A stretch of DNA of 64,000 nt from Octopus sinensis (lineage: Eukaryota). The notes under the pieces are model-generated. The model saw nothing but the letters and a program-made list of their open reading frames with translations. It did not search any database and was not told where the DNA came from. The stretch covers positions 56,172,001 to 56,236,000 of the forward strand of contig NC_043006.1 of assembly GCF_006345805.1 (NCBI RefSeq), given 5' to 3'. Shown here piece after piece: positions 35,080 to 54,895 of the stretch. Position 1 is the stretch's first letter, and each line of letters begins with the position of its first letter. Position numbers and translations under genes: made by a program.

Positions 35080-35163
<84 letters not shown>

Positions 35164-35333
35164 ATATATGTATGTATTTATATATATGTTTATATGTATA
35201 TATATATATGTGATATATATATATATATTATATATATATATATGTAGATATATATACATGTACATATATGTGCATATGTATATATGTATATATATATATA
35301 TATTTGTATTTATATATGTATGTATATATATAT

Positions 35334-37374
35334 GTGGCTACACCAAGCACAAAGAAGGAACCTTGCCCACCACTATGCAAGACCACCACAGTCAACAGAC
35401 ACGGGATGACCTCCCCTAACGCCTGCACAGCCGTCACCCCAATACTGTTACTAAATATTGGGGGCCTGTTGCATCAAAATAAAAACAAAATTTCTTTCCT
35501 GAAAATCTTACTGCATGCAATCAAGCCCTATGCATAGCACTCGTGGAAACTCATCTCAGCCCTGATATAGATGACGCAGAAGTACACGTACCAAACTATG
35601 CTATACTGCGAACAAGGGAAAGGAGCCATTGTGGAGTTGCTGTATACATCCGGGATGACCTCACACCCCAGGTTTTACTGACACTCAAATTCGGTATGAC
35701 ACTTTAATTGTATACATAAAACAACATAATATAGTCATATGCAATACATATTGTCCACCAGATGCTCCAAACCACATAGGCATGTTTGAAGATTGCCTCA
35801 CAAAAATTAAAGAAATCCTCATGAATCTGGAACACCACGTGACCATATTTCTTATGGGTGATTTCAACTTTCCCAACGTCAAATGACCCGAAGGTCTCAT
35901 ACTCTCAGGAATGAATTATTGTAAGCAAGTACAGGTAGAGTCTCTGCTCAACCTCACCAATGCCTTATTCATGGAGCAAGCTGTACTCAAACCAGCTAGA
36001 GCAAATAACATTCTGGATCTCTGCTTCACGAACAATATGGACATCATTCATGATGGGATAGTGACACCGACATTAGTCTCGGATCACAACATAATAAAGC
36101 TGTCTATGTTTGGGCCGAAATTAACCAGAGACATACAGCCTAAAGGAAGCACCCGAAATCTCTCCAATCTGAACTTCTACAAAGCAGATTGGAAATCGAT
36201 CCAAAAAGAGATCCTCAGAAAGGACTCGCCGAAATGTCTCTCCACACCTGACATTGACATGAAGCCGTATGCCAGAAATATGTCCCAGAGCACAAGGCCA
36301 AAACAAATAGGAGCAAGATTCCAAGAGAGAGGAAGATCTTCATGAGACGACGGACGAAGGTTGCAAATCGACTCAACCAACATCCCAAAAGTAGCGAACC
36401 GTCCCGCCTAAAATCAACACAAGTGGAGATCGAAAAAAGGCTGCAACAATCCTATGTGAGGGAGAAAGCAGACAAAGAAGCCTGGGTTATAAAAACATTA
36501 AGTCAAACCTTAAGGCCTTCTTTCATTACGCGAAAGAAACAGCCTCAGTGCACTACAAGACAGGACCCCTTCTCCAAAAGGTTGGCTCCCTCACAGACAG
36601 TCCAACTAAGATCAGTGAGATACTGAATGACCAGTTCAAAAGAATGACCAGTTCAACTACCCCGTTGGAACACAGACAAGTGAACGAACCAGTGGACTTC
36701 TTTGCCGCCTCACCTATAACCAGCGAGGCAGTTACAATAGAATATATTGACATTAGCGAAGAAGATGTACAACTAGCCATAAATGAAGTGGACACAAACT
36801 CAACTGCTGGTCCTGATGGTTTCCTAGCAATCCTCCTCAAAGCGTGTAAGCATGCTCTGGCAAAACCCCTCAAGATTCTCTTCCAGAGTTTTCTTACAAA
36901 TGGCAAACTGCCAAACAAGCTGAAGGAGAGAATAATATACCCAATACATAAAGGGGGAATTAGAGCAGATGCCAAAAACTATAGGCCTATCTCCCTGACT
37001 TCACACATCAGCAAAGTCATGGAACGGATAGTCAGAGGTAAACTAATCGCATTCCTTGAAAAAAATAACTTGCTAAGTGGTACCCAACAACATGGCTTTC
37101 GACCAGGTAGGAGCTGCCTGACCCAGCTCTTACAACGTTATGACTGGGTGCTGAAACAGTTACTCAACAAATCAAATGTGGATGAAATATACCTTGATTT
37201 TTCAAAAGCTTTTGACAAGGTGGATCGTGGTATGATATGCCACAAACTGCGTGATCTCGGCATAGCTGGAAAACTTGGAGTGTGGTTACATGACTTCCTG
37301 AAAGATAGGATTCAGGCAGTAGTGGCTACTGGAGCCACCTCTATCAACACACAAATAGTGAGCGGTGTTCCACA
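35334..37374 (+). mobile_element. CR1/L2-group LINE, 5' part (APE endonuclease plus N-terminal RT)
   Basis: APE motifs LVETHL, MGDFNFP, NILDLCFTN and SDHNII. RT motifs GPDG, IHKGG..NYRPISLTSHISKVME, HGFRPGRSCLTQL and YLDFSKAFDKVD, ending at IVSGVP. Several frameshifts. Confidence 0.9.
37355..37374 (+). repeat. Left copy of the 20-bp direct repeat ATAGTGAGCGGTGTTCCACA
   Basis: Identical to 53771-53790. Confidence 0.9.
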
Positions 37375-37375
37375 T

Positions 37376-37472
<97 letters not shown>

Positions 37473-37476
37473 TATA
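37375..37476. repeat. (TA)n tract at the left edge of the block interrupting the LINE
   Basis: Visible run, followed by a SINE-B central fragment at ~37480-37580. Confidence 0.9.
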
Positions 37477-37711
37477 TGCGTATTTATGTGTGTATTTGTT
37501 TCTGTGCTTAAGATCCCCAACCCAATCGCTTAGAAACCAATGTTTGTGTGTTTATATCTCCGTAACATAGAGGTTCGGCAAAATACACACACACACACAT
37601 ATATATTATATATATGTATATGTATATATATGTATGTATGTATGTATGTGCTATATATATGTGTATATATATTCACATACATGTATATTCTTTATTTGTT
37701 TAATCAACGTA

Positions 37712-37784
<73 letters not shown>

Positions 37785-38402
37785 TATATATGCATATACA
37801 TACATATACATATATATGTATATATATACATATATATATGCATATACATACATATACATATATATGTAACAATCTTTTTGAAGAAAGACTTTCTTGTCTA
37901 ACATCTTTAGTACATATGATATTTATATTGCTGCTCACAATATCTCGTCTACTTGCAATAAGCCAACTAAAATATTTGGAGAAGGATCCAATTTTATTGA
38001 ACAGATAAAGAAGAAAATGAAAGTAGGTCGACCATTGTTGGATTTAAATAAAAGCGTATTTATATTATATACGTTTATATATATAACTAAGTTCATTTTT
38101 ACGTAGATAAGAAGCTTCGATCAATTGTATCCAAGTGATCGTATTACGACGGGGATCTCGGTTTACTTGCTAAGGTGCTATTCAACAAACACGAAAATAG
38201 ACGTATTTGTATAGCTTACGTCTCTCATTTCAAATGCTTTTCAAACTGATAAGTTTCTGGGACATACTGAATTCAGTGCAAGGGTACTTGATCTTATGTA
38301 ATAGGCAAGTGCAGTGTGAGAATAATTAATAGTAATCATGTGTGCTATTTTTTCCTAATGAATTGACCTGTCTATCACAAGTTTTCAATATCAAAATAAC
38401 CG

Positions 38403-38553
38403 ACCGTGTATTAAGCAGCTTGCTTCCCATCCACATGGCTCCGGGTTCAGTTTCAGGGCGTGGAAACTTGGTCAAATGTCTTTTACTACAGCCTCGGGCC
38501 AATCAAAGCCCTCTGAGTGGATTTCAGAAAAGGAAAATCAAGGAAGCCTGCCG

Positions 38554-38593
<40 letters not shown>

Positions 38594-38856
38594 GCCTCAC
38601 ACTAGGAGGGACAAAGTCATTACTACCAAAATTATTACTAATAGTATAATTAGTATAATTTTGGTAGTAATGACTTTGTCCTCCTAGTTGAGGCATTATG
38701 TGTAATAATGCCCTCTATACAATTAGATATAATAATTTGTTCAAAAGAAAAAAATTATTTCGAATTCTTTTCTTTTATGAGGTTTCGCTAGCTACCGATA
38801 ATTCTTGTTAAGATCCCTTATTAAGAGATTATCCTTAATGTTAAACTTATTATAAT

Positions 38857-38888
<32 letters not shown>

Positions 38889-39400
38889 ATATAATATTTA
38901 AAAAAAGGAGATGTCGAACACGAGTGGTGATATATAAAAACGGAATGAAGAAAATGCTGACAAATAATTGAAGTAATTAAGTAATTTAATTAGGTGAAAG
39001 TTCTTTTTACCGGTTGCGCATTTGTTATGCTTATCAAAATATATGTTTTGATAAGCATAACAAATGCGCAACCGTAAAAAGAACTTTCACCTATATAAAT
39101 TACTAAATACTTCAATTATTTGTCAGCATTTTCTTCATTTCCTTTTTTATATATATATATATACATATACATATGTGTGTGTGTGTGCCTTAGTGTATGT
39201 GTTTGTTTCGTACCACCACTTGACAACCAGTGTTGATGTATTTACGGCTATGTAACATAACGGTTTGACAAAAGGGGTGATATAATAAGTACCAGGTTTA
39301 AACAAAATAAGTCTTGTGGGGCGATTTGTTCCACTAAAACCCTTCAAGGTGGTTCCCCAGGATGGCCTCAGTCAAATGACTGAAACCAGTAAAAGATAAA
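38403..39400 (+). mobile_element. Old SINE family B copy split at its internal (TA)n by two fold-back inserts
   Basis: 5' half at 38403-38558 and 3' half at 39175-39400. Palindromes at 38591-38697 and 38931-39155 lie between them. Confidence 0.65.
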
Positions 39401-40400
39401 ATATGAAGGACTTGCAAATAATTTATTACACAATCATCAGGAAATGTGATAGAAAGGATTTTATTGTCACTCGATTATTCCATGTTGATGTTTGAACTAT
39501 TTGCGTCTTTAAAATTCGGGTAAATAAGGATTTTACAATATCAAAGCTCCTTAGCCTGTATCTGTAAAATCATTCAATAATGAGGAAAGAAGATACGAAC
39601 TCTCATGTATATTAGACGCTATTCTGCCAAATATGAATACCACAGATAATGTGATGTGTTTCAGGAAGGCAACATATTCTGTTTCGAATGAGGTATTTGG
39701 AGTGCTTCGCCGGGAGTATTGAGATTGATCTGCTGAAAACAACATTGAAATTAATCATAACACATGAATGTGGGTAACTGAGAGAGAATGGCCAGCGAAA
39801 AAGAGAATTTATCTGGAATGTACTTATCTAATATGACAAGTAGGTAAGTCGTTAAGAGTATGATGGGCTGGAAAAAGAGGCTATTGGCTACACACCTCTG
39901 GTTCATCTCCAATTCTGTCTACTGATCGTACAAAACTGCCAGCTGAAAACCTTCCGTCTGTTTTGTATACTGACTCTTGAATTCACGAATTTGTTCAAAA
40001 ATGTCAGAGAAGGTATAACTTGCTAATAAACTTAGGGTGATTGAGTCTTAACCTAGGTTTAGGTCAAATAAGCTGGCAATTGACATGATGTACTTCTTCA
40101 GACAAGCTTAAAAAAAAAACGACGAATTACTGCAGAAAAATCAAGAACTGCACACTGCGTTAATGTCACTAACGAAACGAACGTAGCGGGAAACATACAA
40201 AAGTTTAAAAACTTAATCGCGTTCATTCTCTACAAACAAGAAGCATTCAGAGCATTGATTGTTTGGTAGTATTACTAAAAATGTTTGGTCAACTGTGTCA
40301 GTGTTAACTTACGACGCCAAACATTGATACTAACACACGGACGTAGCGGGGAACCTACAAACATTTCTAAGACCAGTCGAGTGACTATCTTCTACCAATC

Positions 40401-40404
<4 letters not shown>

Positions 40405-40484
<80 letters not shown>

Positions 40485-40579
40485 ATGTACGTATGCATAT
40501 GTATATATTGTATGTATATATGCATGTTTGTATGTATGTATGTATGTATGTATGTATGTATATATATATATATATATTA

Positions 40580-40610
<31 letters not shown>

Positions 40611-40675
40611 ATGTACGTATGCATATGTATATATTGTATGTATATATGCATGTTGTATGTATGTATGTATGTATG

Positions 40676-40720
<45 letters not shown>
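40405..40720. repeat. (TA)n/(TATG)n block with an internal ~125-bp duplication
   Basis: TTGTATGTACGTATGCATATGTATATATTGTATG occurs twice. Confidence 0.85.
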
Positions 40721-40721
<1 letters not shown>

Positions 40722-41489
40722 TCCGTAATAATGAAGGGTGAAATTAATTAAAAAATTCAATATTAATCATTTATGATTATAGTATTCTACGCTGAAGAGA
40801 AAAGAAGTTTCGGTAAGATAGAATTATTTAATATTAATATTTAATTCTTAGCTTTCCTAAAACTTGATTTCGAAACGTACGTCCGTAGATAACTTAAAAA
40901 ATGTATGATAGATTGCAGTCAATTCATTCTCTCTTACCTGTTTGTGTCAGCTTCCAATTGCTGTTTTTACTGAGATCTCCCTTTTTAGTAGAAGAAATAG
41001 CTATAACCCTTTGACTGCTATTTCTAAATTCGGTATGTGGTAAGGCAATTCGTTGCTAAACCCTTATTGCTTAGTATATATATATATATATATATTGTTT
41101 GTACGTATATATACGTATGCATGTGTATATATTGTATGTATGTATGTGAATTGGTGCTGACGTTGCAACATAATTTACGTAAACCGTAATAAAGGATCTG
41201 GACAAATTACAGATACATTATTCCAGTAAACCTTGTAAATATTGTTTAAAATTTTTTTTTCAGTTGTACATAGAAATCAAATCTCTCTCACTCACGTACC
41301 TCCTCTCTTCACACAAACACGTATATAGATTGAGTGCTTTTTGTATGATCGCTTCAAACTTATAATTTATTTTTTCCCAAAATTAAAATAAAATAATAAT
41401 AATGAAATCATAAAACCCATGTGTGTGAAACAATATTTGTGTAAGCTCTTCAATAAACAATATCAACCATTCTACATTTATATCATGTA

Positions 41490-41881
41490 CTAGCAGTATT
41501 GCCCGGCCCTGCTCGGGTTTGTTTCGACTCTTTAGAATTGGAAGTTTTGAAAAGTAAAAATTATGAATTATGTAGCTTGTTATTCTCTTTAAGTGAACAT
41601 TTTTCTGGTTGAAATACACCGGAAAATGGCGACACAGCAGTCAAAAAATCGTAAAAAATAGGGATTTTTATAGAAAAAAAGCACCTTTTTGATGTAAATA
41701 ATTTTTGGTGCTAACATGGTCCGATTTGAATTTTTTCTTCTACGGAAGGAAGAGCAAGCTTTCTTCTATCATACTTTCAGTTTTCGTCAACTTGCGCCGC
41801 AAGGTCTCGGAGGAGATAGTGTTAGTTGAAGGCTACCAGACCTGCCATACACAGACAACCTCAGCTTGATATATAGAGAGA
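41490..41881 (-). mobile_element. Non-autonomous Helitron
   Basis: Minus strand A|TC.. 5' end; 3' end has the GC hairpin CCCGAGCAGGGCCGGG followed by CTAG|T. Confidence 0.7.
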
Positions 41882-43418
41882 TTGAGAATTACACTTGAAA
41901 GAACTTAATCAACCAAGGACGCGCGCATTTATTTGTTCAACTTGAAAGTGTGCTACTTTATTAACATCTGATTTTGAATCTAGAAGTAGAAAGTTTAGAA
42001 AATTTTGTAATGTATTTTAACGTAATATGTGGTTCCTTGTGGGATTAAGATTTTAGTTCTGTGTTCAATATTGAGATTGTTGACGATGTTCTTGACGTTA
42101 TCCAAAATAATATTGTAGTGTATTTTTGCTTGCGGTTCAAACGGGATTTGATATGAATTGATGTTTTTCTATTTTTGTTCTATCTTATAGATATTCTTAA
42201 ACTTGCAAAGTTTTAAACATATGTTATTCGAGTGATACACGATTTTTTTAAAAATTGTTCGTAGAATATTTTAATCCCATGTCATTTCTGTTTAACTGTC
42301 TTGTCAACTCCAAAACCAAAATTTAAATTAATATCGCAATATGACAGCATACTGAAAATACTAAAAAAAACAAAAACATCTCACATAAGTAAACCTCTCC
42401 CCAGATCCATACTACAATTGAAGAACTTTTTTTATATACAAATTTCGACTTCGCATTTTGCTCACACTTTGAATTAGATTTGAGAAGCGTAAATGGAATT
42501 CTTCAAGACTGCCAATTCCACCACTACATTATTAACTCTAATAATAATTTATAACATTAGCACCGATAGACTATTGAACATTGAGCATTTTGTAGCCTAA
42601 GATGAAACACAATCAGACACTCGTGTATTTCGATATATTATCCTAAAGGAGCAGAATTATATAATTTTTACTCTGCAACATTCTTTTAAGAGATTAATAC
42701 TGATTTATAGCATAATGTGATATATTTGAAGTATGGAAGAAGTCCATTAAATCGATCCTCGTATTTGACTAGTATTCATTTAATCGACTCTGGAAAGCTG
42801 AAATGCATAGTCGACCGGAAATCGAGTGACGCAACTAAACACCACAAGTTATATTTCTGACGGTGTAGAGATTCTGTCACTTATACTGAAGGGAATATAA
42901 TTGTTTAAATCCAGTCTAAAAGAGAAAATAATTTCTCGTATCTACACATGTATTTGACTGAAACCTATAAGGATGAATATCAACTATATAACAGCAGTAG
43001 TATTTAATCTTAGAACGCAAAGCGACATTAGTAAATACCATAGGTATTTTGTCCGTAGCTCTACACGTTGCAACACATCGCTGATTTTTCTTACCTCATA
43101 GTATAGGTGTATAGGACTTACCTAACTTTCCGCAGTGGGGATGAATATGATTCCACGATCAATTAGAACATGTATTTACAAGTAATTACTTACAAAATGC
43201 AGCAGTTAAGAATATAATACCATTACTTTACCTGGGTGTTATATTTCAGGGATGGGGTGAGCTGTTTCCTAAAAAACGACTGGAGACTCTGCAAAAGTAA
43301 AGAAAAATAGATATGGAGACGAACAGCAGAATGATTCATGATTCATTCCAATGATATTGATGTAAATCTACATGAGACATAGATAAGCATTTTATTTTCG
43401 TGCCGACCTCCTGATAAA

Positions 43419-43470
<52 letters not shown>

Positions 43471-43620
43471 GTTGAAATGGAAAGATGAATTTTCTTGTTA
43501 CAGATTATTCAAAAGTTTAACCGATACCTGGGTATCAAAAATCACAGCAGAAAAAAACACGGTTGGAGATAAGACCATATGGTGTTGCAACCGTGCGTTG
43601 GTGCGGATAATTGAAGTTTA

Positions 43621-43865
43621 ATATAATTAGTGAATGGAAGAAATGGAGTTGAACGAAGATTGTACAGAATTCCTTTTATTACATTCTACACATGTTTCAA
43701 AGCCACAATTTTCCAATTCTGATTAAATAAGGATACCAAGCTGCAATATGGTATCCTTATTTAATCAGAATTTGGAAAATTGTGGCCTTTGAAACATGTG
43801 TAGAATGTAATAAAAGGAATTCTGTACAATCTTCGTTCAACTCCATTTCTTCCATTCACTAATTA

Positions 43866-43868
<3 letters not shown>
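43621..43868. repeat. Near-perfect fold-back palindrome with ~118-bp arms
   Basis: 43621-43738 is the inverse of 43749-43868. Loop AGCTGCAATA; two 1-bp indels. Confidence 0.9.
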
Positions 43869-43908
<40 letters not shown>

Positions 43909-44566
43909 ATACCCATATATATATATATAATATACCCACACAATCGAATTGGCAAATGAAAGAGCATAGCAACACAGCATATTTGGTTAGAATACTGTAC
44001 TATGAAAATACACCTGCCTGCTCACCGATCACTCGTTTTTTCTGACGTTTTGGCATGGCGTGAGGACACGACTTCCGCATCCCTATCCGGAGTTTTATCC
44101 CGAGAACTTGGTTTTGTTTACAAACTTTTAATTAAGCCAATGACATTACCATTTCAGACGATAGAAGAGATGAAAGAAAATCAACTACTTGAACCTTGCA
44201 CTACCCAATAATCCTTACTAATTCTTAAAACGCAAATACTAAAACGTTAATCTTTTCTACTTGTTACAGTCACAGAGTTGTGACTAAGCCAAAGCTTAAC
44301 CACACTAGACTTGCTTCACCTAAACCCTTCAAGGACTCCGGTGCTTATTTTCGGTTTCTTCTGTCTTTTGTCAAACTGCAATGTTATAGGGACGTAAAAA
44401 AATCCCCGGGGCTATACAAAAAAAAGGTATCATCCAAATTCCAGCGCAGTGTGATTGGGATACAAGGGAACATGGTTGTGAAGTACGCTTCTCCTTACAC
44501 AGCTACGTCAGCGCCTGGCTAAATAGCAACTAATAAGTATGTATGAAGAGTCACTTTATTTTGTAA

Positions 44567-44962
44567 CTAGCAGTATCGCCCGGCGTTGCTCGGGTTTGTA
44601 AGGGAAATAACTATATAAGCATTTTTAGAGATGTAAAGTATAATAGCCATCTCAATATGGCTAACCATAAAGGTGGGGTGTTACTGTAGCTTTTTACGTT
44701 CTGAGATTTAATAATAAATTTTTAGAGAGTTACTTCCCTTATATATGCCAAAAATGCATTAAAAATGGGAAAAATTGATGGTAATTTTTTTTTTAATCGT
44801 AGACTCATCGTAGACGCACGCTAATGCACAGAAGGGCTCGATATGAATCACGACTATAAGATACCAGGTTTTGGTTAAACTGCACCGCAAAATGTGGGAG
44901 TAGTTAGGAATCTAAATCGTAGGAGACAGACACTCACACAACCTCACTTTTATATATAAAGA
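44567..44962 (-). mobile_element. Non-autonomous Helitron
   Basis: Minus strand A|TC.. 5' end; 3' hairpin CCCGAGCAACGCCGGG followed by CTAG|T. Termini are shared with 41490-41881 but the interior differs. Confidence 0.7.
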
Positions 44963-45027
44963 TATGAAACAATCACATTTAACAAAAATACGTACACACA
45001 TATATAAAAAGAAAGAAAGAAGGAAAT

Positions 45028-45063
<36 letters not shown>

Positions 45064-45434
45064 AAGAGAGAGAGAAAGAGAGAGGGAAAATCAGAAAGAA
45101 GGAGAGTGAAACAGAACATATGTAAACCTACCTCACGGCGTTGGGGTATATTGATGAAGTTCATAGTCGACGTAATTCCCACGTTTACAGCCACTGTTTT
45201 GATTATAGATGGGAAGATGAAAGAGAAACTGCAGTTCATTTTGATACCGTAGTTTTTTAGTGTGTAGGTTCCTGAGTGCGTAATTGATATGACGTTGCAA
45301 GCTGGAAGTAAATTAATGAAGCGAATAACGTAAACAAGCAGATATAGTTAAGAAACGCTAATAGAGCAGTGATCAGATATAACAATATGTTTGTACGCAC
45401 TATATATTTATGTATTGCACTCGCTCTTATATAA

Positions 45435-45463
45435 ACATACATGCATACATACATACATACATA

Positions 45464-45494
<31 letters not shown>

Positions 45495-45828
45495 CATACA
45501 TACATACATATATACATACATACATACATACATGCATACATACATACATGCATACATACATACATATATACATACATACATGCATACATAAATACATACA
45601 TACATACATACATACATGCATACATACATACATACATATATACATACATACATACATACATGCATACATACATACATACATATATACATACATACATACA
45701 TACATACATACATGCATACATACATACATACATACATACATACATACATACATACATACATGCATGCATGCATACATACATACATGCATACATACATACA
45801 TACATATATACATACATACATGCATACA
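45435..45828. repeat. (TACA)n microsatellite
   Basis: Visible run. Confidence 0.95.
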
Positions 45829-46159
45829 TGCTGAATGCCGTACACAATAATCTTTTTCAGGAATAGCATAGACGATCATTTATCTTATATCTAGCCTGAA
45901 GTATTCAAGAAAATATATTGGCAAACGATTATGTCATTTGACTAAAGATGGTGAGCGCATAGGTTCGATTCCTGTTTTGACAGAGTGTCGTGCTTTCGTG
46001 AACACGGCTTTTCATTTCAGGTTATGCTAATTGACTTAGAAACTAGCATCAGAGGAAACTGGTAGTTAAGCCTGCAGTGGAATGCTGTCCGGTTGAGCAG
46101 CGTGTCTTTGTCTCTGAATTACCTACATAACTTACATCTCTGGATAAAGAATACATTCA

Positions 46160-46204
<45 letters not shown>

Positions 46205-46414
46205 CTTTAATCATAAAATCAGGAAGTATGAGAGGTGACTATAGATTTCTTTATGATTTCCATATAATTAAAGCTGTTTTGTAATCTTATCTATGTAGTA
46301 TCGTTTATTTCAACATTTCAATACACATATTTTACATGTATACGCATGCTTAGCATTATAAAATACAAAAGTATATTCACATACAAATGTAGAATAAAGA
46401 AAACTATTTCATCT

Positions 46415-46626
46415 TTACTTTTTTACTTTTTTACTTTTTACTTGTTTCAGTCATGTGACTGTGGCCATGCTGGAGCACCGTCTTTAGTCGAGCAAATCGA
46501 CCCAGGGACTTATCCTTTGGAAGCCCAGTACTTATTCTATCGGTCTCTTTTGCCGAACCGCTAAGTTACGGGGACGTAAACACACCAACATCGGTTGGGG
46601 AGACAAACGCAGACACACGGACATAT

Positions 46627-46657
<31 letters not shown>

Positions 46658-46830
46658 CATATATACGACGGACTTCTTTCAGTTTCCGTCTACCAAATCC
46701 ACTCACAAGGCTTTGGTTGGCCCGAGGCTATAGTGGAAGACACTTACCCAAGGTGCCACGCAGTGGGACTGAACCCGGAACCATGTGGTTGGTAAACAAG
46801 CTACTTACCACACATCCACTCCTACGCCTA
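46415..46830 (-). mobile_element. SINE family B, full length
   Basis: Closely similar to 10551-10965. Confidence 0.85.
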
Positions 46831-47581
46831 TAAATATACGCCCGAAAATATATATTGCAACATTATGGCTAAATCCAGGATGTATCCATATTGTTTCAAT
46901 CCCCATATATAGCTGGCAAAAGTTGTAACATTACGCCTTTCCTGAACTCTAAAAGAAAATCTATAACTATCCAGTCTAGTCGTAATGTGGCCCTCCACTG
47001 CCCCTACGTATTTCTATATATGCAAACGTCATGCTAGCGCGGTCTGACAATATTTATAAGACAAATTTGCACTCTTGAGGGAAGGAGCCGAAAACCTCGC
47101 TTTTGCATCTTATAGGTGGCCGGGTTAAGATATTCTTTTTCTCAGTTAAGTAGAGTTTGCATATCCTACTGCTGTTAAAGTAATACCTACACTTATATAT
47201 ATTCCACTTTATGTCGTAGGCCTAAGAACTCGTGGCGTAGATCAATACAAAAGGAACTAGTGGAAGGAGGGCATTCATGGCAGAGTATAAATACAGAAGC
47301 GAAACATTATGCGACATGGGATTCAATTATAAGTGGCCTATACTCCGCGTTGGATGGTTAAAGGCAGAAAAAAAAGAAAAAAGGAAACAAAAGAAAAAAG
47401 AAAAAAAAGAAGAAAAAAGAAAAAGAAAAAATGCAGTGTTTTCATTTCGTCTGTCTTTACGTTCTGAGTTCAAATTCCGCTTTTCGGGGTCGATAAATTA
47501 AGTACCGGTTGCGTACTAGGGTCGATCTAATCGACTGACCCCCTCCTCCCAAATTCCGGGCCTTGTGTTGGTGTAGAAAAG

Positions 47582-48130
47582 AATATACAGTGTTTTCTTT
47601 CAATGTCCATGTATACTTCGCCAGGGATGTGGTATTTAGTATTTCTTGGATATTAAACGAGGATTTGTTGTTTAACCGATCTCTGAATAGGCCTCCTGTC
47701 ACGCTCACATATTTATACACATCTCTCGCTCCATTAGAATCTAAGAGATGCAAAATATCACATCTCTGGTGAAGCATACATGGACATTGGATGAGAACAT
47801 TGCACATTATGACATCAAGTGGAATATACTCGATAAGTGTAAACAAGACTTTAGCTGCAGTAGGATGTGTTACTTCTGCTTAACTGAGAAAAGGAACTCC
47901 CCAATCCAGCCATCTATAAGCTGTAAAAGTGAAGTCTTCTGTTCCTTCCCTCAGTAGAGAAAAATGTGCCTTATACTCATAATCGAATGCAAGAGTATCA
48001 CCCTAAAGCAGTTCATGTTTGAAGCTCCGACGAAGCTATAAGCTGATACTCAAGCAGTCAAGTATGAGTTCATTGTAACTTACCGCAGAAATAGCTATGA
48101 GCTGAAGATGTTCATAGCGTAATTGTTTAT
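47582..48130 (+). mobile_element. Decayed PLE GIY-YIG fragment with an inverted upstream EN segment
   Basis: Plus: TSLVKHTWTLDENIAHYDIKWNILDKCK..CYFCLTEK. Minus (47582-47700): VTGGLFRDRLNNKSSF..NTTSLAKYTWTLKEN. Confidence 0.6.
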
Positions 48131-48443
48131 TCTGTTATCATACCAATTTCTTATATATATACATACATACATACAAACAAACACACACGCACATACATTA
48201 GGACCACTGAGGATTATAGGTGCACTGGGATATGTAACATACTGCCAAAATTAGGCTTCCCAAAGCCAGAAAAAGGAAAGCTGATTCGAAGACTACAGAT
48301 CCAATCCACCACTGGAACTGTAAAAATCTGTAAAACTTTCTAGAAGTTTATCATTTAAATATATATGAGCATGTCTAGATATGCAAGTATATAGTATATG
48401 CATGGGAAGACATACATAAAACAAAGCATACAAATCTGCACGT

Positions 48444-48575
48444 ATACATACATACATACATACATACATACATACATACATACATACATACATACATAAT
48501 ACATACATACATACATACATACATACATACATACATACATACATACATACATACATACATACATACATACATACA
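48444..48575. repeat. (TACA)n microsatellite
   Basis: Visible run. Confidence 0.95.
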
Positions 48576-49089
48576 AACAAACAAAAATACCCTGTTGCTG
48601 ATGCTGAAATTCCAATAAAAGAGCCTTGGATTTTGGTTAGAAATTACCTCTTTTCTATTGGCTAGAAATCTTGAAATAAAACTGAATAATGACGTACATA
48701 CATGCATGCGTACGTACGCATGCACGTACATACATACTTACATAGATCTGAATATACGTGTATATATATTTTCTTAAACATAAATAAGTAAATCGGTACT
48801 TACGCAATGAGTTCTTGATGAATTTTACCCGTAAGGTGAAACCCTGTCCTTTTATTGGGACATAAAAGTTAATAAGAGCTGCGTTCTGTGATGCAATGAA
48901 CTTGCGTCTTGGCCTATTGATTCCACAATATCTTTCATCGTGTAGATTCCTGGGTAGATCGTTAGGACTGGGGAAGAATTGGTTGTTCAGCTCCCATCCA
49001 TCAATGATCTAAAGAAAGACAAAAGTAATAATTTTACTCATATTTTTGTATGCACGGAAATATTTATCGAATGTTCTCAAAGTACAGAT

Positions 49090-49395
49090 TTGTTCAGTGA
49101 TGTAAAATTTCACTAAGCAACTGACATTGTCGCTTACGACAACGAGTATTCCAGCTGATCCGATCAACGGAACGGCCTGTCCGTGAAAATAACGTGAAAG
49201 TGGCCAGCACTCCACGGACACGCTTACCATTAACGTAGTTCTCAGGGAGATTCGGTGTGACACAGAATGTGACGAAGTTGGCCATTTGAAATACAAGTAG
49301 TGCACGTTCAACTGTGTGGACTGGAGCAATGTGAAATAAAATGTCTTGTTGAAGGACGTAACTCATCACTGGTATTTGAACTCACGTCCTTACGT
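49090..49395 (-). mobile_element. tRNA/CORE-type SINE
   Basis: CORE-like GTGGACTGGAGCAATGTGAAATAAAATGTCTTG is shared with 63721-63900. Decayed B-box end at ~49380. Confidence 0.55.
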
Positions 49396-49609
49396 TCACG
49401 AGCTAAATACAGTAACAACTAAGTCACGCGCCTTCATGTCATTATACTTATTCGGGATGGTTAAAACCTTCTATTTATACATCATTCAGAAGAAATCTCG
49501 TTTAAAAATAGGTCGTATGACACCTTGTAACACTCCTAGAAACTACTTGTTTTGTTATTTTTATTGTTGCTGTTTGGATATGAAGAGGTTATAGTGGTGG
49601 TGGTTGTAA

Positions 49610-49830
49610 GGCGGCGAGCTGGCAGACACGTTTGCGCGCCGGGCGGAATGCTTAGCGGTATTTCGTCTGTCGTTACGTTCTGAGTTCAAATTCCACCGAG
49701 GTCGACTTTGCCTTTCATCCTTTCGGGGTTGTTAAGTAAAAGTACCAGTTTCGCACTGGGGTTGATCTAATCGACTTAATCCCTTTGTTTTTCCTCTCTA
49801 TGTTTAGCCCCTTGTGGGCAATAAAGAAAT
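49610..49830 (+). mobile_element. SINE family A with 17-bp TSD
   Basis: Flanked by ATAGTGGTGGTGGTTGT at 49591-49607 and 49833-49849. Confidence 0.85.
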
Positions 49831-51049
49831 ATATAGTGGTGGTGGTTGTGTTATTTAGCCCCAGGTCAGCAAGAAAATCTTTTCGTAACATCTATTTAGG
49901 ACCAGTGAAAATTAAACTTGCCAGTCGAATCATCCTTCTCAGATCATACAAACTACTGATATTTCATATATTTAAGAAGCAAAATTATTTCCTTTTTGAG
50001 AAAAATTAAATGATCACTCTAAGGTTTCCATATGTTATTTATTGGGAAACAGGTCGTAATGGGATTCACAATATATTTCCACGTGGATATAAAACTTTTA
50101 GTCCAAGTGGAAAAATATAACGCTTTTTCAATTATTTTGTCTATTTGTTTGATTTCTAAAATTAGTATAATCCTAATGCAATAAAATTTGAAACAGAAAG
50201 CTGATTCCGTAATTTACAAAAATGCTGCTGGTATCTTTACCACAACTTCAAAGCTGCAATATTTAACACAGAACATTACTATCATTTATGAAATAATCGG
50301 AAAGTAGGTGTGACTAATTTAACATTGAAACTAAACTAAAATGCAAGACCCAATATATGAACGAAACTACTTTTTCAGGGAACAGATAATTTGTGAAATG
50401 TTCACATCATAATGTGTAAATTGAAACAGAAGTTATTTGACCGATAATGGCGAATGTGAAATACCTAACAATAGATTCATAAGTTTCCTTATTGCTTTAG
50501 CATTGCAAGTGGTATAAAAGGATATTTTCTATTGTGCTGCTCTATGTTGCATTTTAAAGCTATACCAATTAAACTATTTTTTAAAAATATCTGAAAATAT
50601 TTGTACAAAGTCAAGAAAGACGTTATGAATTAATGATTCAATTCCTCAGGAATTTATTTGTTATCATTCATTATCAAGTCAACAATAAACAGCACCCAGG
50701 AGTGAAACTACGAAAACTTAAGCTTGTCAGCAATTAAATCTAAGTCTTTGATCCGAATCAAGACAAAATCGAATGTCCATGGTTTTGTGTTCAATTACCG
50801 CCGAAGACGGCTTTGACTTTCACGTTTTTCGATGCTGATAAAATAAACATCTGTTGAGCAGTATGGGTCCAATATTGCTTTTACGAGAGTAACGTGTAAA
50901 AGGAGGATGTTATTAATAATATAGAAATGATATTGATTAAAGCTGTTACATGTATCCATCTGTATAAAATCAGACTTATATGTACACATATAAATATGTT
51001 CACACGCACACACACTCACGCACTCACACACACACACACACATCATCTA

Positions 51050-51245
51050 TTACTTGTTTCAGTCATTAGACTGCGGCCATGCTGGGGGACCACCCTGAAG
51101 AATTTTTAGTTGAATGTATCGAGCCCAGTACTTATGTTATCAATCATTTTTGCCGAACTGCTAGGTTATGGGGACATAAACAAACCAGCATTGTTTGTCA
51201 AGCCTTGGTGGAAGGGGGGACAAATACACACACGCGCACACACAC

Positions 51246-51294
<49 letters not shown>

Positions 51295-51425
51295 TATTAT
51301 ATATATATATACATACACGACGGGCTTCGGTCCGAGGCTATAGACGAAGACACCTGCTCAAGGTGTTACGCAGTGAGACTGAACCCAGAACAATGTGGTT
51401 GGTAAGCAAGCTTCTTACCACGAAC
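51050..51425 (-). mobile_element. Older SINE family B copy
   Basis: Head, internal (TA)n and tail motifs are present but diverged. Confidence 0.7.
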
Positions 51426-51666
51426 ACACAAATACATATCTATAAAAGTTTGAACATTCATCTGCACATATATATCACATCACCTGGTGACCTCAGTGTG
51501 AGTCCCCAGGTCACCAAAAGCAATATAGAAATGAGCATGACTTATTAAAGCAACATGTGATCTAGCTCTGAAATCACACCGTTGGGAATGGTGGTTTGCG
51601 GGAAGACTTCTCTTCTGTTGGTCCCTTTTCCTGTTTTCCTATAACTGCTCAAAATATATGCATATT

Positions 51667-51835
51667 GTTGGTGTATTTACACCCCCGTAACTTAGCACTT
51701 CAGCAAAAGTGACCGATAGAATATGTACTAGACTTGCAAAGAATAAGTCCTGGGGGCGAATTCTTCGACTAAAAGCGGTGCTTTAGCATGGTCGCAGTCA
51801 AATGACTGAAACAAATAAAAGAACAAAAGAATACA
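51667..51835 (+). mobile_element. SINE family B 3' half
   Basis: GCGGTGCTTTAGCATGGTCGCAGTCAAATGACTGAAACAAATAAAAG tail. Confidence 0.7.
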
Positions 51836-51838
51836 AGA

Positions 51839-51872
<34 letters not shown>

Positions 51873-52070
51873 TAAGCAATATAGGATGCTTGCTACAGGA
51901 GACTGGTAACCATTACAATTTGTAGCGGCGAAAGGTCTGGACGTTTTTTCTGAGGCTGACCAAAGAATTTTTATTTTAGATATAAGTGATGTACTCAAGT
52001 GTAGTTATGTTTTTAGCTTGTGCTTTTTCCATGATCATACGTGAGTATTTTATTTATATCCCATCGAAAG

Positions 52071-52133
52071 TTCTACTGAAGAAGGAATATATCTTTTTTA
52101 TAAGATTAAGTCCGAAATTGATTCAATATAGAG
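52071..52133 (+). ncRNA. Type I hammerhead ribozyme, unit 1
   Basis: TTCTA-CTGAAGA-A-GGA..ATCTT/AAGAT..TCC-GAAA-TTG-ATT-CAA-TA-TAGAG. Predicted cleavage after 52128 (AUA). Confidence 0.75.
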
Positions 52134-52562
52134 ATAACGAAATTTAAATTTTCTAAAGGTTAGTTGCCCGTTTTCAGTTTCAATTTTCCTGTAACAAGCG
52201 GATTATAAGTGGATAAAACAGTGTATTTGGCTTTAGAATAACCCTCTTAGCCCTTAATTATATGATGTATATTGCAAACGTAACGGTTTTTTTAAATATA
52301 CTGCCCACGCTTCCTGATGAATTCCTTTGCTGTAGAGTAAGGGACTTCATCCTATATTGCTTAGTAGTAAACTCGATGCTTGCTACAGGAGGACTGGTAA
52401 CCATTACAATTTGTAGCGGCGAAAGGTCTGGACGTTGTTTTCTGAGGCTGACCAAAGAATTTTTATTTTTAGATATAGTGACTGTACTCAAGTGTAGTTA
52501 TGTTTTTAGCTTGTGCTTTTTCCATGATCATACGTGAGTATTTTATTTATATCCATCGAAAG

Positions 52563-52625
52563 TTCTACTGAAGAAGGAATATATCTTTTTTATAAGATTA
52601 AGTCCGAAATTGATTCAATATAGAG
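52563..52625 (+). ncRNA. Type I hammerhead ribozyme, unit 2
   Basis: Same motif; predicted cleavage after 52620. Confidence 0.75.
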
Positions 52626-53055
52626 ATAACGAAATTTAAATTTTCTAAAGGTTAGTTGCCCGTTTTCAGTTTCAATTTTCCTGTAACAAGCGGATTATAA
52701 GTGGATAAAACAGTGTATTTGGCTTTAGAATAACCTCTTTAGCCCTTAATTATATGATGTATATTGCAACCGTAACGGTTTTTTTTAATTATACTGCCCA
52801 CGCTTCCTGATGAATTCCTTTGCTGTAGAGTAAGGGACTTCATCCTATATTGCTTAGTAGTAAACTCGATGCTTGCTACAGGAGGACTGGTAACCATTAC
52901 AATTTGTAGCGGCGAAAGGTCTGGACGTTGTTTTCTGAGGCTGACCAAAGATTTTTATTTTTAGATATAAGTGATGTACTCAAGTGTAGTTATGTTTTTA
53001 GCTTGTGCTTTTTCCATGATCATACGTGAGTATTTTATTTATATCCCATCGAAAG

Positions 53056-53118
53056 TTCTACTGAAGAAGGAATATATCTTTTTTATAAGATTAAGTCCGA
53101 AATTGATTCAATATAGAG
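53056..53118 (+). ncRNA. Type I hammerhead ribozyme, unit 3
   Basis: Same motif; predicted cleavage after 53113. Confidence 0.75.
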
Positions 53119-53546
53119 ATAACGAAATTTAAATTTTCTAAAGGTTAGTTGCCCGTTTTCAGTTTCAATTTTCCTGTAACAAGCGGATTATAAGTGGATA
53201 AAACAGTGTATTTGGCTTTAGAATAACCCTCTTTAGCCCTTAATTATATGATGTATATTGCAACCGTAACGGTTTTTTTAAATATACTGCCACGCTTCCT
53301 GATGAATTCCTTTGCTGTAGAGTAAGGGACTTCATCCTATATTGCTTAGTAGTAAACTCGATGCTTGCTACAGGAGGACTGGTAACCATTACAATTTGTA
53401 GCGGCGAAAGGTCTGGACGTTGTTTTCTGGCTGACCAAAGAATTTTTTATTTTAGATATAAGTGATGTACTCAAGTGTAGTTATGTTTTTAGCTTGTGCT
53501 TTTTCCATGATCATACGTGAGTATTTTATTTATATCCCATCGAAAG

Positions 53547-53609
53547 TTCTACTGAAGAAGGAATATATCTTTTTTATAAGATTAAGTCCGAAATTGATTC
53601 AATATAGAG
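53547..53609 (+). ncRNA. Type I hammerhead ribozyme, unit 4
   Basis: Same motif; predicted cleavage after 53604. Confidence 0.75.
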
Positions 53610-53740
53610 ATAACGAAATTTAAATTTTCTAAAGGTTAGTTGCCCGTTTTCAGTTTCAATTTTCCTGTAACAAGCGGATTATAAGGGATTTTAAAACAGT
53701 GTATTTGGCTTTAGAATAACCTCTTTAGCCCTTAATTATA

Positions 53741-53770
<30 letters not shown>

Positions 53771-53777
<7 letters not shown>

Positions 53778-54895
53778 GCGGTGTTCCACAAGGCACTGTT
53801 TTGGGACCACTACTGTTCATAATGGCCCTCTCAGACATGCCCTCAGCTACGCAGAGAGCCACGATCACAAGTTATGCAGATGATACAAAAGTTTCACAGG
53901 CAATACAGAACCCCGAAGACACTATGCACCTGCAATGTGAGCTGGACAAAATATACAAGCGGGCTGAAAAGAATAGCATGCAGTTCAATGCTGAAAAGTT
54001 TCAAGCTTTATGCTATCAGCATGCAAAGCTAAATGCAACACCCAATAAATGCACTAGACCTGGAGGGATTGCAATCCCAGAGGCACAATCAGTGCGAGAC
54101 CTGGGTATTTACATGAGTGATGATGCAACATTCATGTGCATTTTGCTAAATTGGCAATGAAATGTAGGCGGCTGACCGAATGGATTCTTAGAACCTTTAG
54201 AACAAGAGACCAGGAAACCATGATTGTCTTCTGGAGGACACTTGTCCTAAGCCACTTTCCTTATTGCTCTCAGATATGGTCACCATCCAGTGTCAAGTTA
54301 ATCACAGAACTTGAGGCGATCCAACGAAGCTACACGATGAAGATAGCCTCTGTGCAGCATATAAGCTACTGGGAAAGACTCAAGAGATTAAGACTCTATT
54401 CCTTAGAGCGTAGGCGAGAAAGATATGCCATAATATACATCTGGAAGATCCTAGAAGGACTTGTCCCAAACTTTGGCATCGAGAGTTACACAAATACTAG
54501 AACTGGGCGCCACTGCATAGTGCCAGGGACTCCAAATTTGCCATCAAGATGTAGGACAAGATACTGTGATAGCCTGGGCTTCAGAGGCCCACAGCTCTTC
54601 AATATCCTCCCGAAGAACCTGAGAGACCTGCATGGGGTGGATGCAGATGTTTTAAAATAAAACTGGATCTCTTCTTGTCAGGTGTCCCAGATGAACCAAC
54701 TTCACAGCAGGAGGTGCAGATGAGGGCAGCTGCATCGAACTCTCTCATGCACCAAATGGCAATTGCTAAAAAACATTCGTGAAGTAAAATCATGTAGCAA
54801 CACCAAATAGCGGTGCCCCCGCATGGCCACAGCTCGTGAGCTGAAACTAGATAAAATAAAAATAAAATAAAATAAAATAAATAAATAAAAATAAA
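53771..54895 (+). mobile_element. CR1/L2-group LINE, 3' part (C-terminal RT, 3' UTR, (TAAAA)n tail)
   Basis: Resumes at SGVPQGTVLGPLLF..SYADDTK..QFNAEKFQ..VRDLG, then SYWERLKRLRLYSLERRRER. Ends with GCGGTGCCCCCGCATGGCCACAGCTCGTGAGCTGAAACTAG plus (TAAAA)n. Confidence 0.9.

What the first reader, a model, noticed from the sequence alone, without database searches (positions are those of the whole stretch)
37355..53790. 16.4-kb (TA)n-bounded block splits a LINE RT gene and is flanked by an exact 20-bp duplication
Seen: the LINE RT stops at ..IVSGVP (37374) and resumes at SGVPQGTVLGP (53771). ATAGTGAGCGGTGTTCCACA is present at both junctions (37355-37374 and 53771-53790). The intervening 16,396 bp begin and end in (TA)n. 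They contain ordinary genomic debris (SINEs, Helitrons, palindromes, the ribozyme array) and no transposase or RT able to move them. The left (TA)n leads into a SINE-B middle fragment. Inference: a staggered cut with a TSD was filled either by a large captured genomic segment (repair, eccDNA integration via (TA)n recombination, or PLE-driven transduction) or by serial insertion into a founder (TA)n. Either route would be a microsatellite-seeded mechanism of genome expansion.
Basis: partly seen in the sequence, partly recalled or inferred. Interest (0 to 1): 0.75.

Follow-up and report, generated by a model that had tools for sequence, protein, structure and literature searches.

The report
LINE split by resident gene exons
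The 16.4-kb block that splits an old octopus LINE element is the host's own DNA, carrying three exons of the CRF-binding-protein gene in their normal order, so this is a small local reshuffle (or odd two-site LINE integration, or assembly mis-order) with breakpoints in (TA)n tracts, and not captured or accumulated junk.

Summary
The 20-mer occurs exactly twice, at 37355-37374 and 53771-53790. Removing one copy plus the 16,396 bp between them restores an uninterrupted RT frame, and that frame aligns without gaps to related LINE copies. The block starts with (TA)52 and ends with (TA)15.

The interpretation mostly fails. The block is not only debris. It holds three canonically spliced exons of the Octopus sinensis corticotropin-releasing-factor binding protein gene (XP_036362595.1) on the minus strand. 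These exons are colinear with the next two exons, which lie outside the block beyond the LINE's 5' half. The block is therefore resident DNA, and the two LINE halves sit in two different introns. Capture from elsewhere, serial TE nesting in a founder (TA)n, and genome expansion are not supported.

All three tail-less LINE junctions abut (TA)n tracts.

My best reading (about 0.4) is a balanced local transposition. The 2.0-kb LINE 5' part and the adjacent 16.4-kb gene segment swapped places. Two breaks fell in (TA)n tracts, and one staggered break in the LINE was filled in to give the 16-20-bp duplication.

Rivals are a split LINE integration from one RNA at two (TA)n ends, a local assembly mis-order, and coincidence. 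Orthologous DNA could not be retrieved, so the mechanism stays open.

The parts
35083..35333 (.). Degenerate (AT)n tract of about 250 bp directly upstream of the LINE's 5' end
   Evidence: TRF period 2, 126 copies, 80% matches; sequence read
35334..37374 (+). LINE 5' part (APE endonuclease plus the first half of the RT). It is decayed by frameshifts and stops, has no tail, and ends with the left copy of the 20-mer
   Evidence: Pfam Exo_endo_phos_2 and RVT_1; three-frame translation; tblastn of relatives
37355..37374 (+). Left copy of the duplicated 20-mer ATAGTGAGCGGTGTTCCACA
37374..37477 (.). (TA)52, 96% pure, at the left end of the block
37478..37583 (+). Fragment of the octopus tRNA-derived SINE. 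It starts at the SINE's internal microsatellite and is cut off at both ends
   Evidence: Self-BLAST 37406-37583 vs 51315-51148; sequence read
37375..53770 (.). The 16,396-bp block. It is resident intron and exon DNA of the CRF-binding-protein gene with ordinary intronic repeats
48804..49008 (-). CRF-BP exon, residues 92-159 (CRF-BP_N domain), 100% identical to XP_036362595.1; acceptor tttctttAG, donor GTAAGT
   Evidence: Pfam PF05428, E 1.7e-6, above the curated cutoff; tblastn; splice sites
45132..45301 (-). CRF-BP exon, residues about 160-216 (start of the CRF-BP_C domain), canonical AG/GT
   Evidence: Pfam PF23541
43232..43288 (-). CRF-BP exon, residues about 216-235, canonical AG/GT. It splices across the LINE 5' part to the exon at 28353
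28239..28353 (-). CRF-BP exon, residues 235-273, outside the block (left of the LINE 5' part)
26038..26177 (-). CRF-BP last coding exon, residues 274-319 plus the stop codon, outside the block
51840..51871 (.). (TA)16 on the left flank of the tandem array
51885..53750 (.). 492-bp x 3.8 tandem array with 97% identical units, itself bracketed by (TA)16 and (TA)15. No ribozyme was detected
   Evidence: TRF; self-BLAST; Rfam negative
53743..53772 (.). (TA)15 at the right end of the block
53771..53790 (+). Right copy of the duplicated 20-mer
53771..54895 (+). LINE 3' part (second half of the RT and the C-terminal region) ending in an (ATAAA)n tail at 54851-54895, followed by the flank TATCAGTTAC

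Best explanation
What it is (high confidence, about 0.9): one old, decayed CR1/jockey-like LINE copy on the + strand is present as two exactly complementary pieces. The pieces lie in two different introns of the Octopus sinensis CRF-binding-protein gene, which runs on the minus strand. The 16.4 kb between them is the gene's own resident DNA and includes three consecutive coding exons.

How it arose (inferred, about 0.4): a balanced local transposition.
- The LINE first inserted as one piece at the right edge of a (TA)n tract, between the block and the sequence that now follows its tail.
- Later three breaks occurred within about 18.5 kb. Two fell in (TA)n tracts, which form cruciforms and are fragile: one at the present A|block boundary and one just 5' of the LINE. 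The third was a staggered break of 16-20 nt inside the LINE, of the kind LINE endonucleases make.
- The 2.0-kb LINE 5' fragment and the 16.4-kb gene segment were rejoined in swapped order with orientations kept.
- Fill-in of the staggered ends left the 20-mer on both LINE pieces, and every other joint is hidden inside TA repeats.

A two-step version gives the same product: excision of one segment as a circle by (TA)n x (TA)n recombination, then re-entry at a nearby (TA)n tract. Because exon order is unchanged, the gene is unaffected.
For: Resident block:
- Pfam CRF-BP_N and CRF-BP_C hits fall on minus-strand fragments of the block.
- A 319-aa CRF-BP protein matches 100% over the 68-residue exon.
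- tblastn places residues 92-236 inside the block and residues 235-319 outside it at 28.3 and 26.1 kb, same strand and order.
- The O. sinensis protein XP_036362595.1 matches every exon exactly.
- Splicing five exons at canonical AG/GT sites reproduces residues ~98-319 exactly; residues 92-97 follow from the tttctttAG acceptor read at 49008.
- The same exon order is encoded in O. vulgaris and O. bimaculoides proteins.

One LINE copy:
- The 20-mer is exact and unique to the two junctions.
- The frame is restored on joining.
- Related LINEs align contiguously at 706/707 and 535/536.
- No other fragment of this LINE group is in the window.

(TA)n at breakpoints:
- An (AT)n tract lies directly 5' of the LINE, (TA)52 follows the left 20-mer, and (TA)15 precedes the right 20-mer.
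- Pure TA runs cover only about 3% of the window.
- The 3' piece keeps a normal tail-to-flank joint, so it probably never moved.

Precedents:
- AT/TA repeats are cruciform-forming fragile sites (PMC12972899).
- DSB ends made by LINE ORF2p show TSD-like overlaps of 4-15 bp and get ligated to distal DNA (bioRxiv 10.1101/2024.12.14.628481; PMC13526784).
Against: No orthologous or allelic sequence could be obtained, so no intermediate state (an intact LINE next to the block) has been seen. Three coordinated breaks, or excision plus re-entry, in the germline is a rare kind of event. A copy-neutral, orientation-preserving outcome is only one of several possible rejoinings. Nothing in the sequence separates this model from a split LINE integration or from a mis-ordering of (TA)n-bounded segments in a PacBio CLR assembly. 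The cause of a 16-20-nt staggered break at that spot is assumed, not shown.
Confidence: 0.4

Rival explanations
1. Split LINE integration with no host rearrangement. One LINE RNA was reverse-transcribed from two DNA 3' ends on the same strand, 16.4 kb apart. Ordinary tail priming at the edge of the right (TA)n tract gave the 5'-truncated 3' piece, joined to (TA)15 through ATA microhomology. Internal priming from a nick or break in the left (TA)n tract gave the tail-less 5' piece. On this reading the 16-20-nt overlap is RNA template copied twice and not a target-site duplication.
For: - The 5' piece is 3'-truncated, has no tail, has no discernible TSD and is flanked on both sides by TA repeats. 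These are the hallmarks of endonuclease-independent or internally primed L1 insertions (PMC1920257).
- The 3' piece has a normal tail junction and 3-nt microhomology at its truncated end.
- The host gene is intact without any further assumption.
- Two pieces of one mRNA at two separate breakpoints have been seen in L1-expressing cells (bioRxiv 10.1101/2024.12.14.628481).
- It needs a single event.
Against: - Known twin priming uses the opposite strand at the same site. It gives inverted, adjacent halves, usually with an internal deletion and not a duplication (PMC2837659).
- A same-strand second primer 16 kb away has not, to my knowledge, been described.
- Microhomology at the proposed internal priming site is only about 1 nt.
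- A clean 16-20-bp duplication is more typical of a staggered DNA cut.
Confidence: 0.22
2. Local assembly mis-order. The true O. sinensis sequence would be A-(TA)n-block-(TA)n-LINE, with only a small (TA)n-bounded insertion flanked by the 20-bp TSD (possibly the 492-bp array element). The assembler threaded the (TA)n-bounded 2.0-kb and 16.4-kb segments in the wrong order.
For: Every joint involved lies in TA repeats, which are hard to sequence and polish. The swapped path uses each unique segment exactly once, so both orders are valid walks through a graph that collapses TA tracts. The window matches O. sinensis, whose public chromosome assembly is, from memory, built on PacBio CLR reads. The window has no Ns, so gaps would not flag a problem.
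Against: The TA tracts are only 30-250 bp long, far shorter than typical long reads, so reads should span the 2-kb piece with both flanks. A mis-order that returns precisely to the same LINE needs two coordinated errors. This model still needs a real (TA)n-bounded insertion with a 16-20-bp TSD inside the LINE.
Confidence: 0.15
3. Two independent insertions of the same LINE family in neighbouring introns. One is 5'-truncated and the other later lost its 3' part. Their ends happen to overlap by 20 bp.
For: LINEs make up about 13% of the O. vulgaris genome (PMC13282606).
Against: The ends would have to coincide within about 20 bp out of more than 3 kb. The 20 shared bases are identical, although the nearest relatives found are only 75-80% identical. 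Both pieces have the same orientation. All three junctions are at (TA)n, and no other copy of the family is in 64 kb. A rough joint chance is well below 1e-3 per LINE fragment (my estimate).
Confidence: 0.07
4. A staggered cut in the LINE was filled by a genomic segment captured from elsewhere (repair, eccDNA, PLE transduction), or a founder (TA)n grew by serial TE insertions. Either way the genome expanded.
For: The flanking duplication is exact and the empty site can be restored. Many elements in the block sit in or next to TA repeats: two palindromic MITE-like elements split a SINE at its internal TA tract, and the tandem array lies between (TA)16 and (TA)15. Naiad PLEs are known to prefer (TA)n and occur in Octopus (PMC8557442).
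Against: The block carries three conserved, canonically spliced exons that continue the reading frame of the exons outside it. No second copy of these exons is in the window. The block has no RT, transposase or ribozyme. This reading survives only if a duplicate of the gene's middle was inserted next to the original and the original was then lost, and that amounts to relocation.
Confidence: 0.04

Closest known systems
Classical nested insertion with a target-site duplication (a TE inside a LINE)
   Same: An exact direct repeat lies at both junctions. Removing one repeat plus the interior restores the LINE reading frame and colinearity with relatives. The repeat length of 16-20 bp is in the range produced by LINE-type staggered nicks.
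   Different: The interior is not a mobile element or foreign DNA. It is resident gene sequence with three exons colinear with exons outside. It has no terminal repeats, no tail and no coding capacity for movement.
L1 twin priming / dual priming (Ostertag and Kazazian model; variants in PMC2837659)
   Same: Two complementary pieces of one LINE, apparently from one template, meet at a defined internal position.
   Different: Twin-primed halves are inverted relative to each other, adjacent, inside one TSD, and usually show an internal deletion. Here the halves are in the same orientation, 16.4 kb apart, and overlap by 16-20 nt.
Rearrangements at LINE ORF2p-generated breaks, where retrotransposition intermediates or their reciprocal ends join distal DNA (bioRxiv 10.1101/2024.12.14.628481; PMC13526784)
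   Same: These show TSD-like overlaps of 4-15 bp at the two sides of a staggered break, ligation to distal DNA ends, 3'-truncated tail-less insertions, and pieces of one cDNA at two breakpoints.
   Different: Those cases are somatic or experimental human events and are often unbalanced. Here the event is fixed in an octopus germline assembly and is copy-neutral. The LINE involved may be the target of the break and not the active element.
Endonuclease-independent (non-classical) L1 insertions at DNA breaks (PMC1920257)
   Same: The 5' LINE piece is 3'-truncated, has no tail, has no recognisable TSD, and lies in a break-prone sequence.
   Different: Non-classical insertions are isolated fragments. 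None is reported with its exactly complementary, tailed partner 16 kb away.
Translocation through circular intermediates (cattle KIT colour-sidedness; recalled from Durkin et al. 2012, cited in PMC3784456)
   Same: A resident segment is excised and re-enters the genome. Repeats at the ends could mediate circle formation.
   Different: That case is inter-chromosomal and duplicative, with a circularly permuted insert. Here the move is 2-16 kb within one gene and copy-neutral, and permutation cannot be tested.
(TA)n as a preferred TE target (Naiad Penelope-like elements, PMC8557442) and as a fragile, cruciform-forming repeat (PMC12972899)
   Same: TA tracts in this window are crowded with insertions and sit at every hidden joint of the structure.
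   Different: No Naiad RT is present in the block. The event of interest relocates resident DNA and is not a PLE insertion.

Membership tests
TE or foreign-DNA insertion flanked by a target-site duplication | Identical short direct repeats at both junctions, present once in the uninterrupted sequence | tested here: met
   The 20-mer is exact at 37355-37374 and 53771-53790 only. It is single in related LINEs, whose alignments are contiguous at 706/707 and 535/536.
TE or foreign-DNA insertion flanked by a target-site duplication | The interior is foreign to the locus (a mobile element or DNA from elsewhere) | tested here: not met
   Three exons of the surrounding CRF-BP gene lie inside, colinear and in frame with exons outside.
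TE or foreign-DNA insertion flanked by a target-site duplication | Element hallmarks at the ends (TIRs, LTRs, 3' tail) or coding capacity for movement | tested here: not met
   The ends are plain (TA)n. Pfam found no RT, transposase or integrase on six-frame fragments.
TE nest grown by serial insertion into a microsatellite | The interior decomposes entirely into TE insertions and repeat remnants | tested here: not met
   Conserved coding exons with canonical splice sites lie at 49008-48804, 45301-45132 and 43288-43232. Local nesting in TA tracts does occur on a small scale, for example at 38406-39404.
APE-type non-LTR retrotransposon (CR1/jockey-like LINE) | N-terminal apurinic-type endonuclease followed by an RT domain, with a 3' simple-repeat tail | tested here: met
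   Pfam Exo_endo_phos_2 (E 5e-9) and RVT_1 (E 4e-27). (ATAAA)n tail at 54851-54895. The closest proteins are octopod 'jockey-like' RTs at 61-78% identity. Clade assignment within LINEs was not tested.
L1-type twin priming | The 5' part is inverted relative to the 3' part, and both lie adjacent within one TSD | tested here: not met
   Both halves are on the + strand and 16,396 bp apart.
Endonuclease-independent LINE insertion (for the 5' piece alone) | 3' truncation, no tail, no TSD, non-consensus target | tested here: inconclusive
   3' truncation and the lack of a tail are met. A TSD cannot be read because both flanks are TA repeats. The pre-insertion state is not available.
Corticotropin-releasing-factor binding protein gene | CRF-BP_N and CRF-BP_C domains, with identity to the annotated orthologue | tested here: met
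   PF05428 scores 28.3 bits against a cutoff of 25. PF23541 scores 18.2 bits on one exon alone. The spliced exons equal XP_036362595.1 residues 92-319. The precomputed Pfam hits on the O. vulgaris protein list both domains.
Hammerhead or other self-cleaving ribozyme array (retrozyme) | A match to a ribozyme covariance model in each repeat unit | tested here: not met
   Rfam 15 gives no ribozyme hit in 37000-54000 at gathering score or at E <= 1. The tandem array itself is real.
Naiad Penelope-like element | N-terminal GIY-YIG endonuclease linked to a C-terminal RT, with insertion in (TA)n | tested here: inconclusive
   A weak GIY-YIG hit (E 1e-3, below the cutoff) falls on ORF 34207-34755 next to the (AT)n tract. 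Related remnants lie at 47.0-48.0 kb. No RT was found beside either.

The most novel reading that the evidence does not exclude
A single LINE RNA was copied from two separate (TA)n DNA ends on the same strand, 16 kb apart. This produced a split insertion whose halves overlap by 16-20 nt and bracket untouched host exons. It would be a germline, same-orientation, long-range relative of twin priming, with TA microsatellites serving as priming sites independent of the element's tail.
Probability: 0.22. Interest if true: 0.7.

Novelty: new variant of a known kind. Interest (0 to 1): 0.42.

Why it matters
If the arrangement is real, it is a clean, sequence-resolved footprint of a copy-neutral micro-rearrangement inside a conserved gene. 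Fragile (TA)n tracts supply the hidden breakpoints, and a LINE acts as a built-in marker that makes the event visible. Octopus genomes carry a TA tract every couple of kilobases, so such events could shuffle intronic DNA often and go unseen wherever no split repeat marks them. If instead the split-integration reading is right, it would extend the known range of LINE integration outcomes. For annotation, the practical lesson is that a TSD-flanked 'insert' should be checked for host exons before it is called captured or nested DNA.

Tried and rejected
1. Ribozymes. Rfam at gathering score on the whole window, and at E <= 1 on 37-54 kb, gave only spurious microsatellite 'miRNA' matches. I dropped the ribozyme array label.
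2. Mobility genes in the block. Pfam on all non-low-complexity six-frame fragments of 40 aa or more found no RT or transposase. The same scan revealed the CRF-BP exons.
3. Other (TA)n tracts flanked by complex direct repeats, which would indicate a class of TSD-making (TA)n-ended elements. Only the pair under study was found.
4. Near-identical LINE ORFs from other reads or assemblies, to recover an allelic or orthologous junction. The best hits were only 75-78% identical. Exact look-up of a window ORF found nothing.
5. Orthologous DNA through the CRF-BP gene models of O. vulgaris and O. bimaculoides. The gene ranges of 160 kb and 149 kb are too long for the tool, so no DNA was returned. The shorter isoform is not on record.
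6. A word-indexed search with the 68-aa exon peptide found nothing. The exhaustive HMMER search then found the protein.
7. I considered the left SINE fragment (37478-37583) and the SINE 3' part at 51666-51839 as two ends of one founder SINE. I rejected this because they overlap by about 45 bp and differ by about 30% there.
8. I considered tandem duplication with a breakpoint in the LINE, and NAHR between two LINE copies. I rejected both because they predict a second L1 or L2 copy, or loss of the block, and neither is seen.

Full report
**1. The observation**

The 20-mer ATAGTGAGCGGTGTTCCACA occurs exactly twice in the 64-kb window, at 37355-37374 and 53771-53790. It has no other match even with three mismatches, and none was expected in shuffles. 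To the left of the first copy and to the right of the second lie the two parts of one non-LTR retrotransposon. Joining 35334-37374 to 53791-55000 gives an uninterrupted frame ...[20 protein letters not shown]... through the conserved RT motif. Pfam reports an APE-type endonuclease and a single continuous RVT_1 match.

Related LINE copies were fetched from public contigs and are 73-79% identical in DNA. They align to the joined sequence without a gap. The left half ends at base 706 of L001 and the right half starts at base 707; in L002 the bases are 535 and 536. Protein relatives show the same contiguity. The two pieces are therefore one LINE copy, and the 20-mer is present once in the family.

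The intervening 16,396 bp start with (TA)52 and end with (TA)15. The first three and the last base of the 20-mer are also in phase with the TA tracts, so the securely duplicated core is 16-20 bp.

**2. What the block contains**

- There are several copies and fragments of the octopus tRNA-derived SINE, which has its own internal TA/CA microsatellite.
- Two short elements have Helitron-like CTAG|T ends and a hairpin.
- Three palindromic MITE-like elements sit in TA repeats.
- There are long (ACAT)n and (ATAC)n tracts.
- A 492-bp x 3.8 tandem array is itself bracketed by (TA)16 and (TA)15.

Rfam finds no ribozyme anywhere in the block. Pfam finds no reverse transcriptase or transposase.

The same Pfam scan gave the key result. 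Two minus-strand fragments match the N- and C-terminal domains of corticotropin-releasing-factor binding protein (CRF-BP). An exhaustive HMMER search with the 68-residue fragment returned a 319-aa protein that is 100% identical over it. Its cluster holds the CRF-BP proteins of Octopus vulgaris, O. bimaculoides and O. sinensis.

The O. sinensis protein XP_036362595.1 matches every exon in the window exactly, including two residues that differ in the other species. The window is therefore O. sinensis.

**3. The block is resident DNA**

On the minus strand the exons lie as follows:
- 49008-48804 (residues 92-159)
- 45301-45132
- 43288-43232 (through residue about 235)
- 28353-28239
- 26177-26038 (to the stop codon)

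All have canonical AG acceptors and GT donors. Spliced together they reproduce residues 92-319 of the annotated protein exactly. The first three exons are inside the block. The last two are outside it, beyond the LINE's 5' part. Exons for residues 1-91 are not in the window and presumably lie upstream, past 64000, since the gene spans 149-160 kb in the sister species.

A segment brought in from elsewhere, or built up from TE insertions, would not carry exactly the middle exons of the surrounding gene in the right order, strand and phase. The block therefore belongs to this locus, and the two LINE pieces sit in two different introns. It also changes the question: the host DNA has not gained an insert, and what needs explaining is how one LINE copy became discontinuous.

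**4. Anatomy relevant to mechanism**

- The 3' LINE piece keeps a normal (ATAAA)n tail and a normal tail-to-flank joint.
- The 5' piece has no tail.
- All three other LINE boundaries abut TA repeats. A 250-bp degenerate (AT)n tract lies directly 5' of the LINE, (TA)52 follows the left 20-mer, and (TA)15 precedes the right one.
- Pure TA runs cover about 3% of the window, so three hits out of three is not chance.
- The right junction shares ATA between the TA tract and the LINE. The left junction shares one base.
- No other TA tract in the window is flanked by a complex direct repeat, and no other fragment of this LINE group is present.

**5. Explanations**

The net change relative to any simple ancestor is that two adjacent, (TA)n-bounded segments stand in swapped order. 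These are the 2.0-kb LINE 5' part and the 16.4-kb gene segment.

(a) Balanced local transposition. I rank this first, at about 0.4. Two breaks fell in TA tracts and one staggered break fell in the LINE. Fill-in of the staggered ends duplicated the 16-20-mer. The event ran either as a single three-break rejoining or as excision of a circle by (TA)n x (TA)n recombination followed by re-entry nearby. AT/TA repeats are documented fragile, cruciform-forming sites (PMC12972899). Breaks made by LINE ORF2p show TSD-like overlaps and are ligated to distal DNA (bioRxiv 10.1101/2024.12.14.628481; PMC13526784).

(b) Split integration of one LINE RNA from two TA-tract DNA ends, at about 0.22. The tail-less, 3'-truncated 5' piece looks like an endonuclease-independent or internally primed insertion (PMC1920257), and the host gene needs no rearrangement. 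However, known twin priming gives inverted, adjacent halves, usually with a deletion (PMC2837659). Same-strand priming at 16 kb is unprecedented to my knowledge.

(c) Mis-ordering of the TA-bounded segments in the assembly, at about 0.15. Both orders are valid walks if TA tracts collapse. The tracts are short relative to long reads, though.

(d) Coincidence of two independent fragments, at about 0.07.

None of these can be separated further from the window alone.

**6. What could not be done**

Orthologous or allelic DNA was not obtainable. The gene models of the sister species are too long for the retrieval tool. The protein collections hold no near-identical ORF from this LINE copy. The decisive tests are therefore read-level validation of both junctions and comparison of the CRF-BP introns across octopods.

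**7. Verdict**

The structure is best filed as a new variant of known LINE- and microsatellite-associated structural change, with an unresolved mechanism and a non-trivial chance of being an assembly artefact. Interest is moderate.

Noticed in passing
window 26038-49008 (minus strand): Five coding exons of the O. sinensis CRF-binding-protein gene (XP_036362595.1, residues 92-319) lie in the window. Exons for residues 1-91 are absent, so the gene continues beyond 64000. An alternative last exon used by an O. vulgaris isoform maps to 21534-21466.
   Followed up: yes
window 34207-34755 (+): A 182-aa ORF with a weak GIY-YIG endonuclease match (Pfam E 1e-3, below the cutoff) lies just left of the (AT)n tract that borders the LINE. 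It could be the N-terminal endonuclease of a Naiad-type Penelope-like element, a group reported to target (TA)n and to occur in Octopus. No RT was found next to it.
   Followed up: partly
window 47066-47963: A nested inverted-repeat structure has outer arms of 131 nt (75% complementary) and inner arms of 80 nt (78%). It carries decayed GIY-YIG-like coding remnants on both strands, which are 29% identical to the ORF at 34207. It may be a head-to-head PLE-like remnant. It also produced a spurious MIR2646 match in Rfam.
   Followed up: partly
window 51885-53750: A 492-bp unit is repeated 3.8 times at 97% identity, sits between (TA)16 and (TA)15, and has no other copy in the window. It has no Rfam ribozyme and no Pfam domain. 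A 16-nt inverted copy of unit sequence (actaagcaatatagga) lies at its left edge. Its origin is unknown. It could be a non-autonomous tandem element that inserted into a TA tract.
   Followed up: partly
window 38406-39404: One SINE copy is split at its internal TA microsatellite by about 560 bp. The inserted material holds two palindromic MITE-like elements (38591-38697 and 38930-39154) and further TA runs. This is a small, genuine example of serial insertion into a TA tract.
   Followed up: partly
window 41491-~41871 and 44568-~44963 (minus strand): Two elements of about 380-400 bp have Helitron-like ends: 5' TCTCTATATAT / TCTTTATATAT, and a 3' GC-rich hairpin followed by CTAG, inserted next to T. 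Their termini are similar and their interiors differ.
   Followed up: no
window 45435-45829 and 48444-48583: Long (ACAT)99 and (ATAC)35 tracts in CRF-BP introns give many sub-threshold Rfam 'mir-297 / mir-466' matches. These are microsatellite artefacts, not miRNA genes.
   Followed up: yes
loci L001, L002 (ENA metagenome scaffolds) and L003 (GCA_024449705.1): The closest relatives of this LINE in the protein collection sit on short contigs from samples labelled as metagenomes. These are presumably host or prey cephalopod DNA in those samples. The species of GCA_024449705.1 was not looked up.
   Followed up: no
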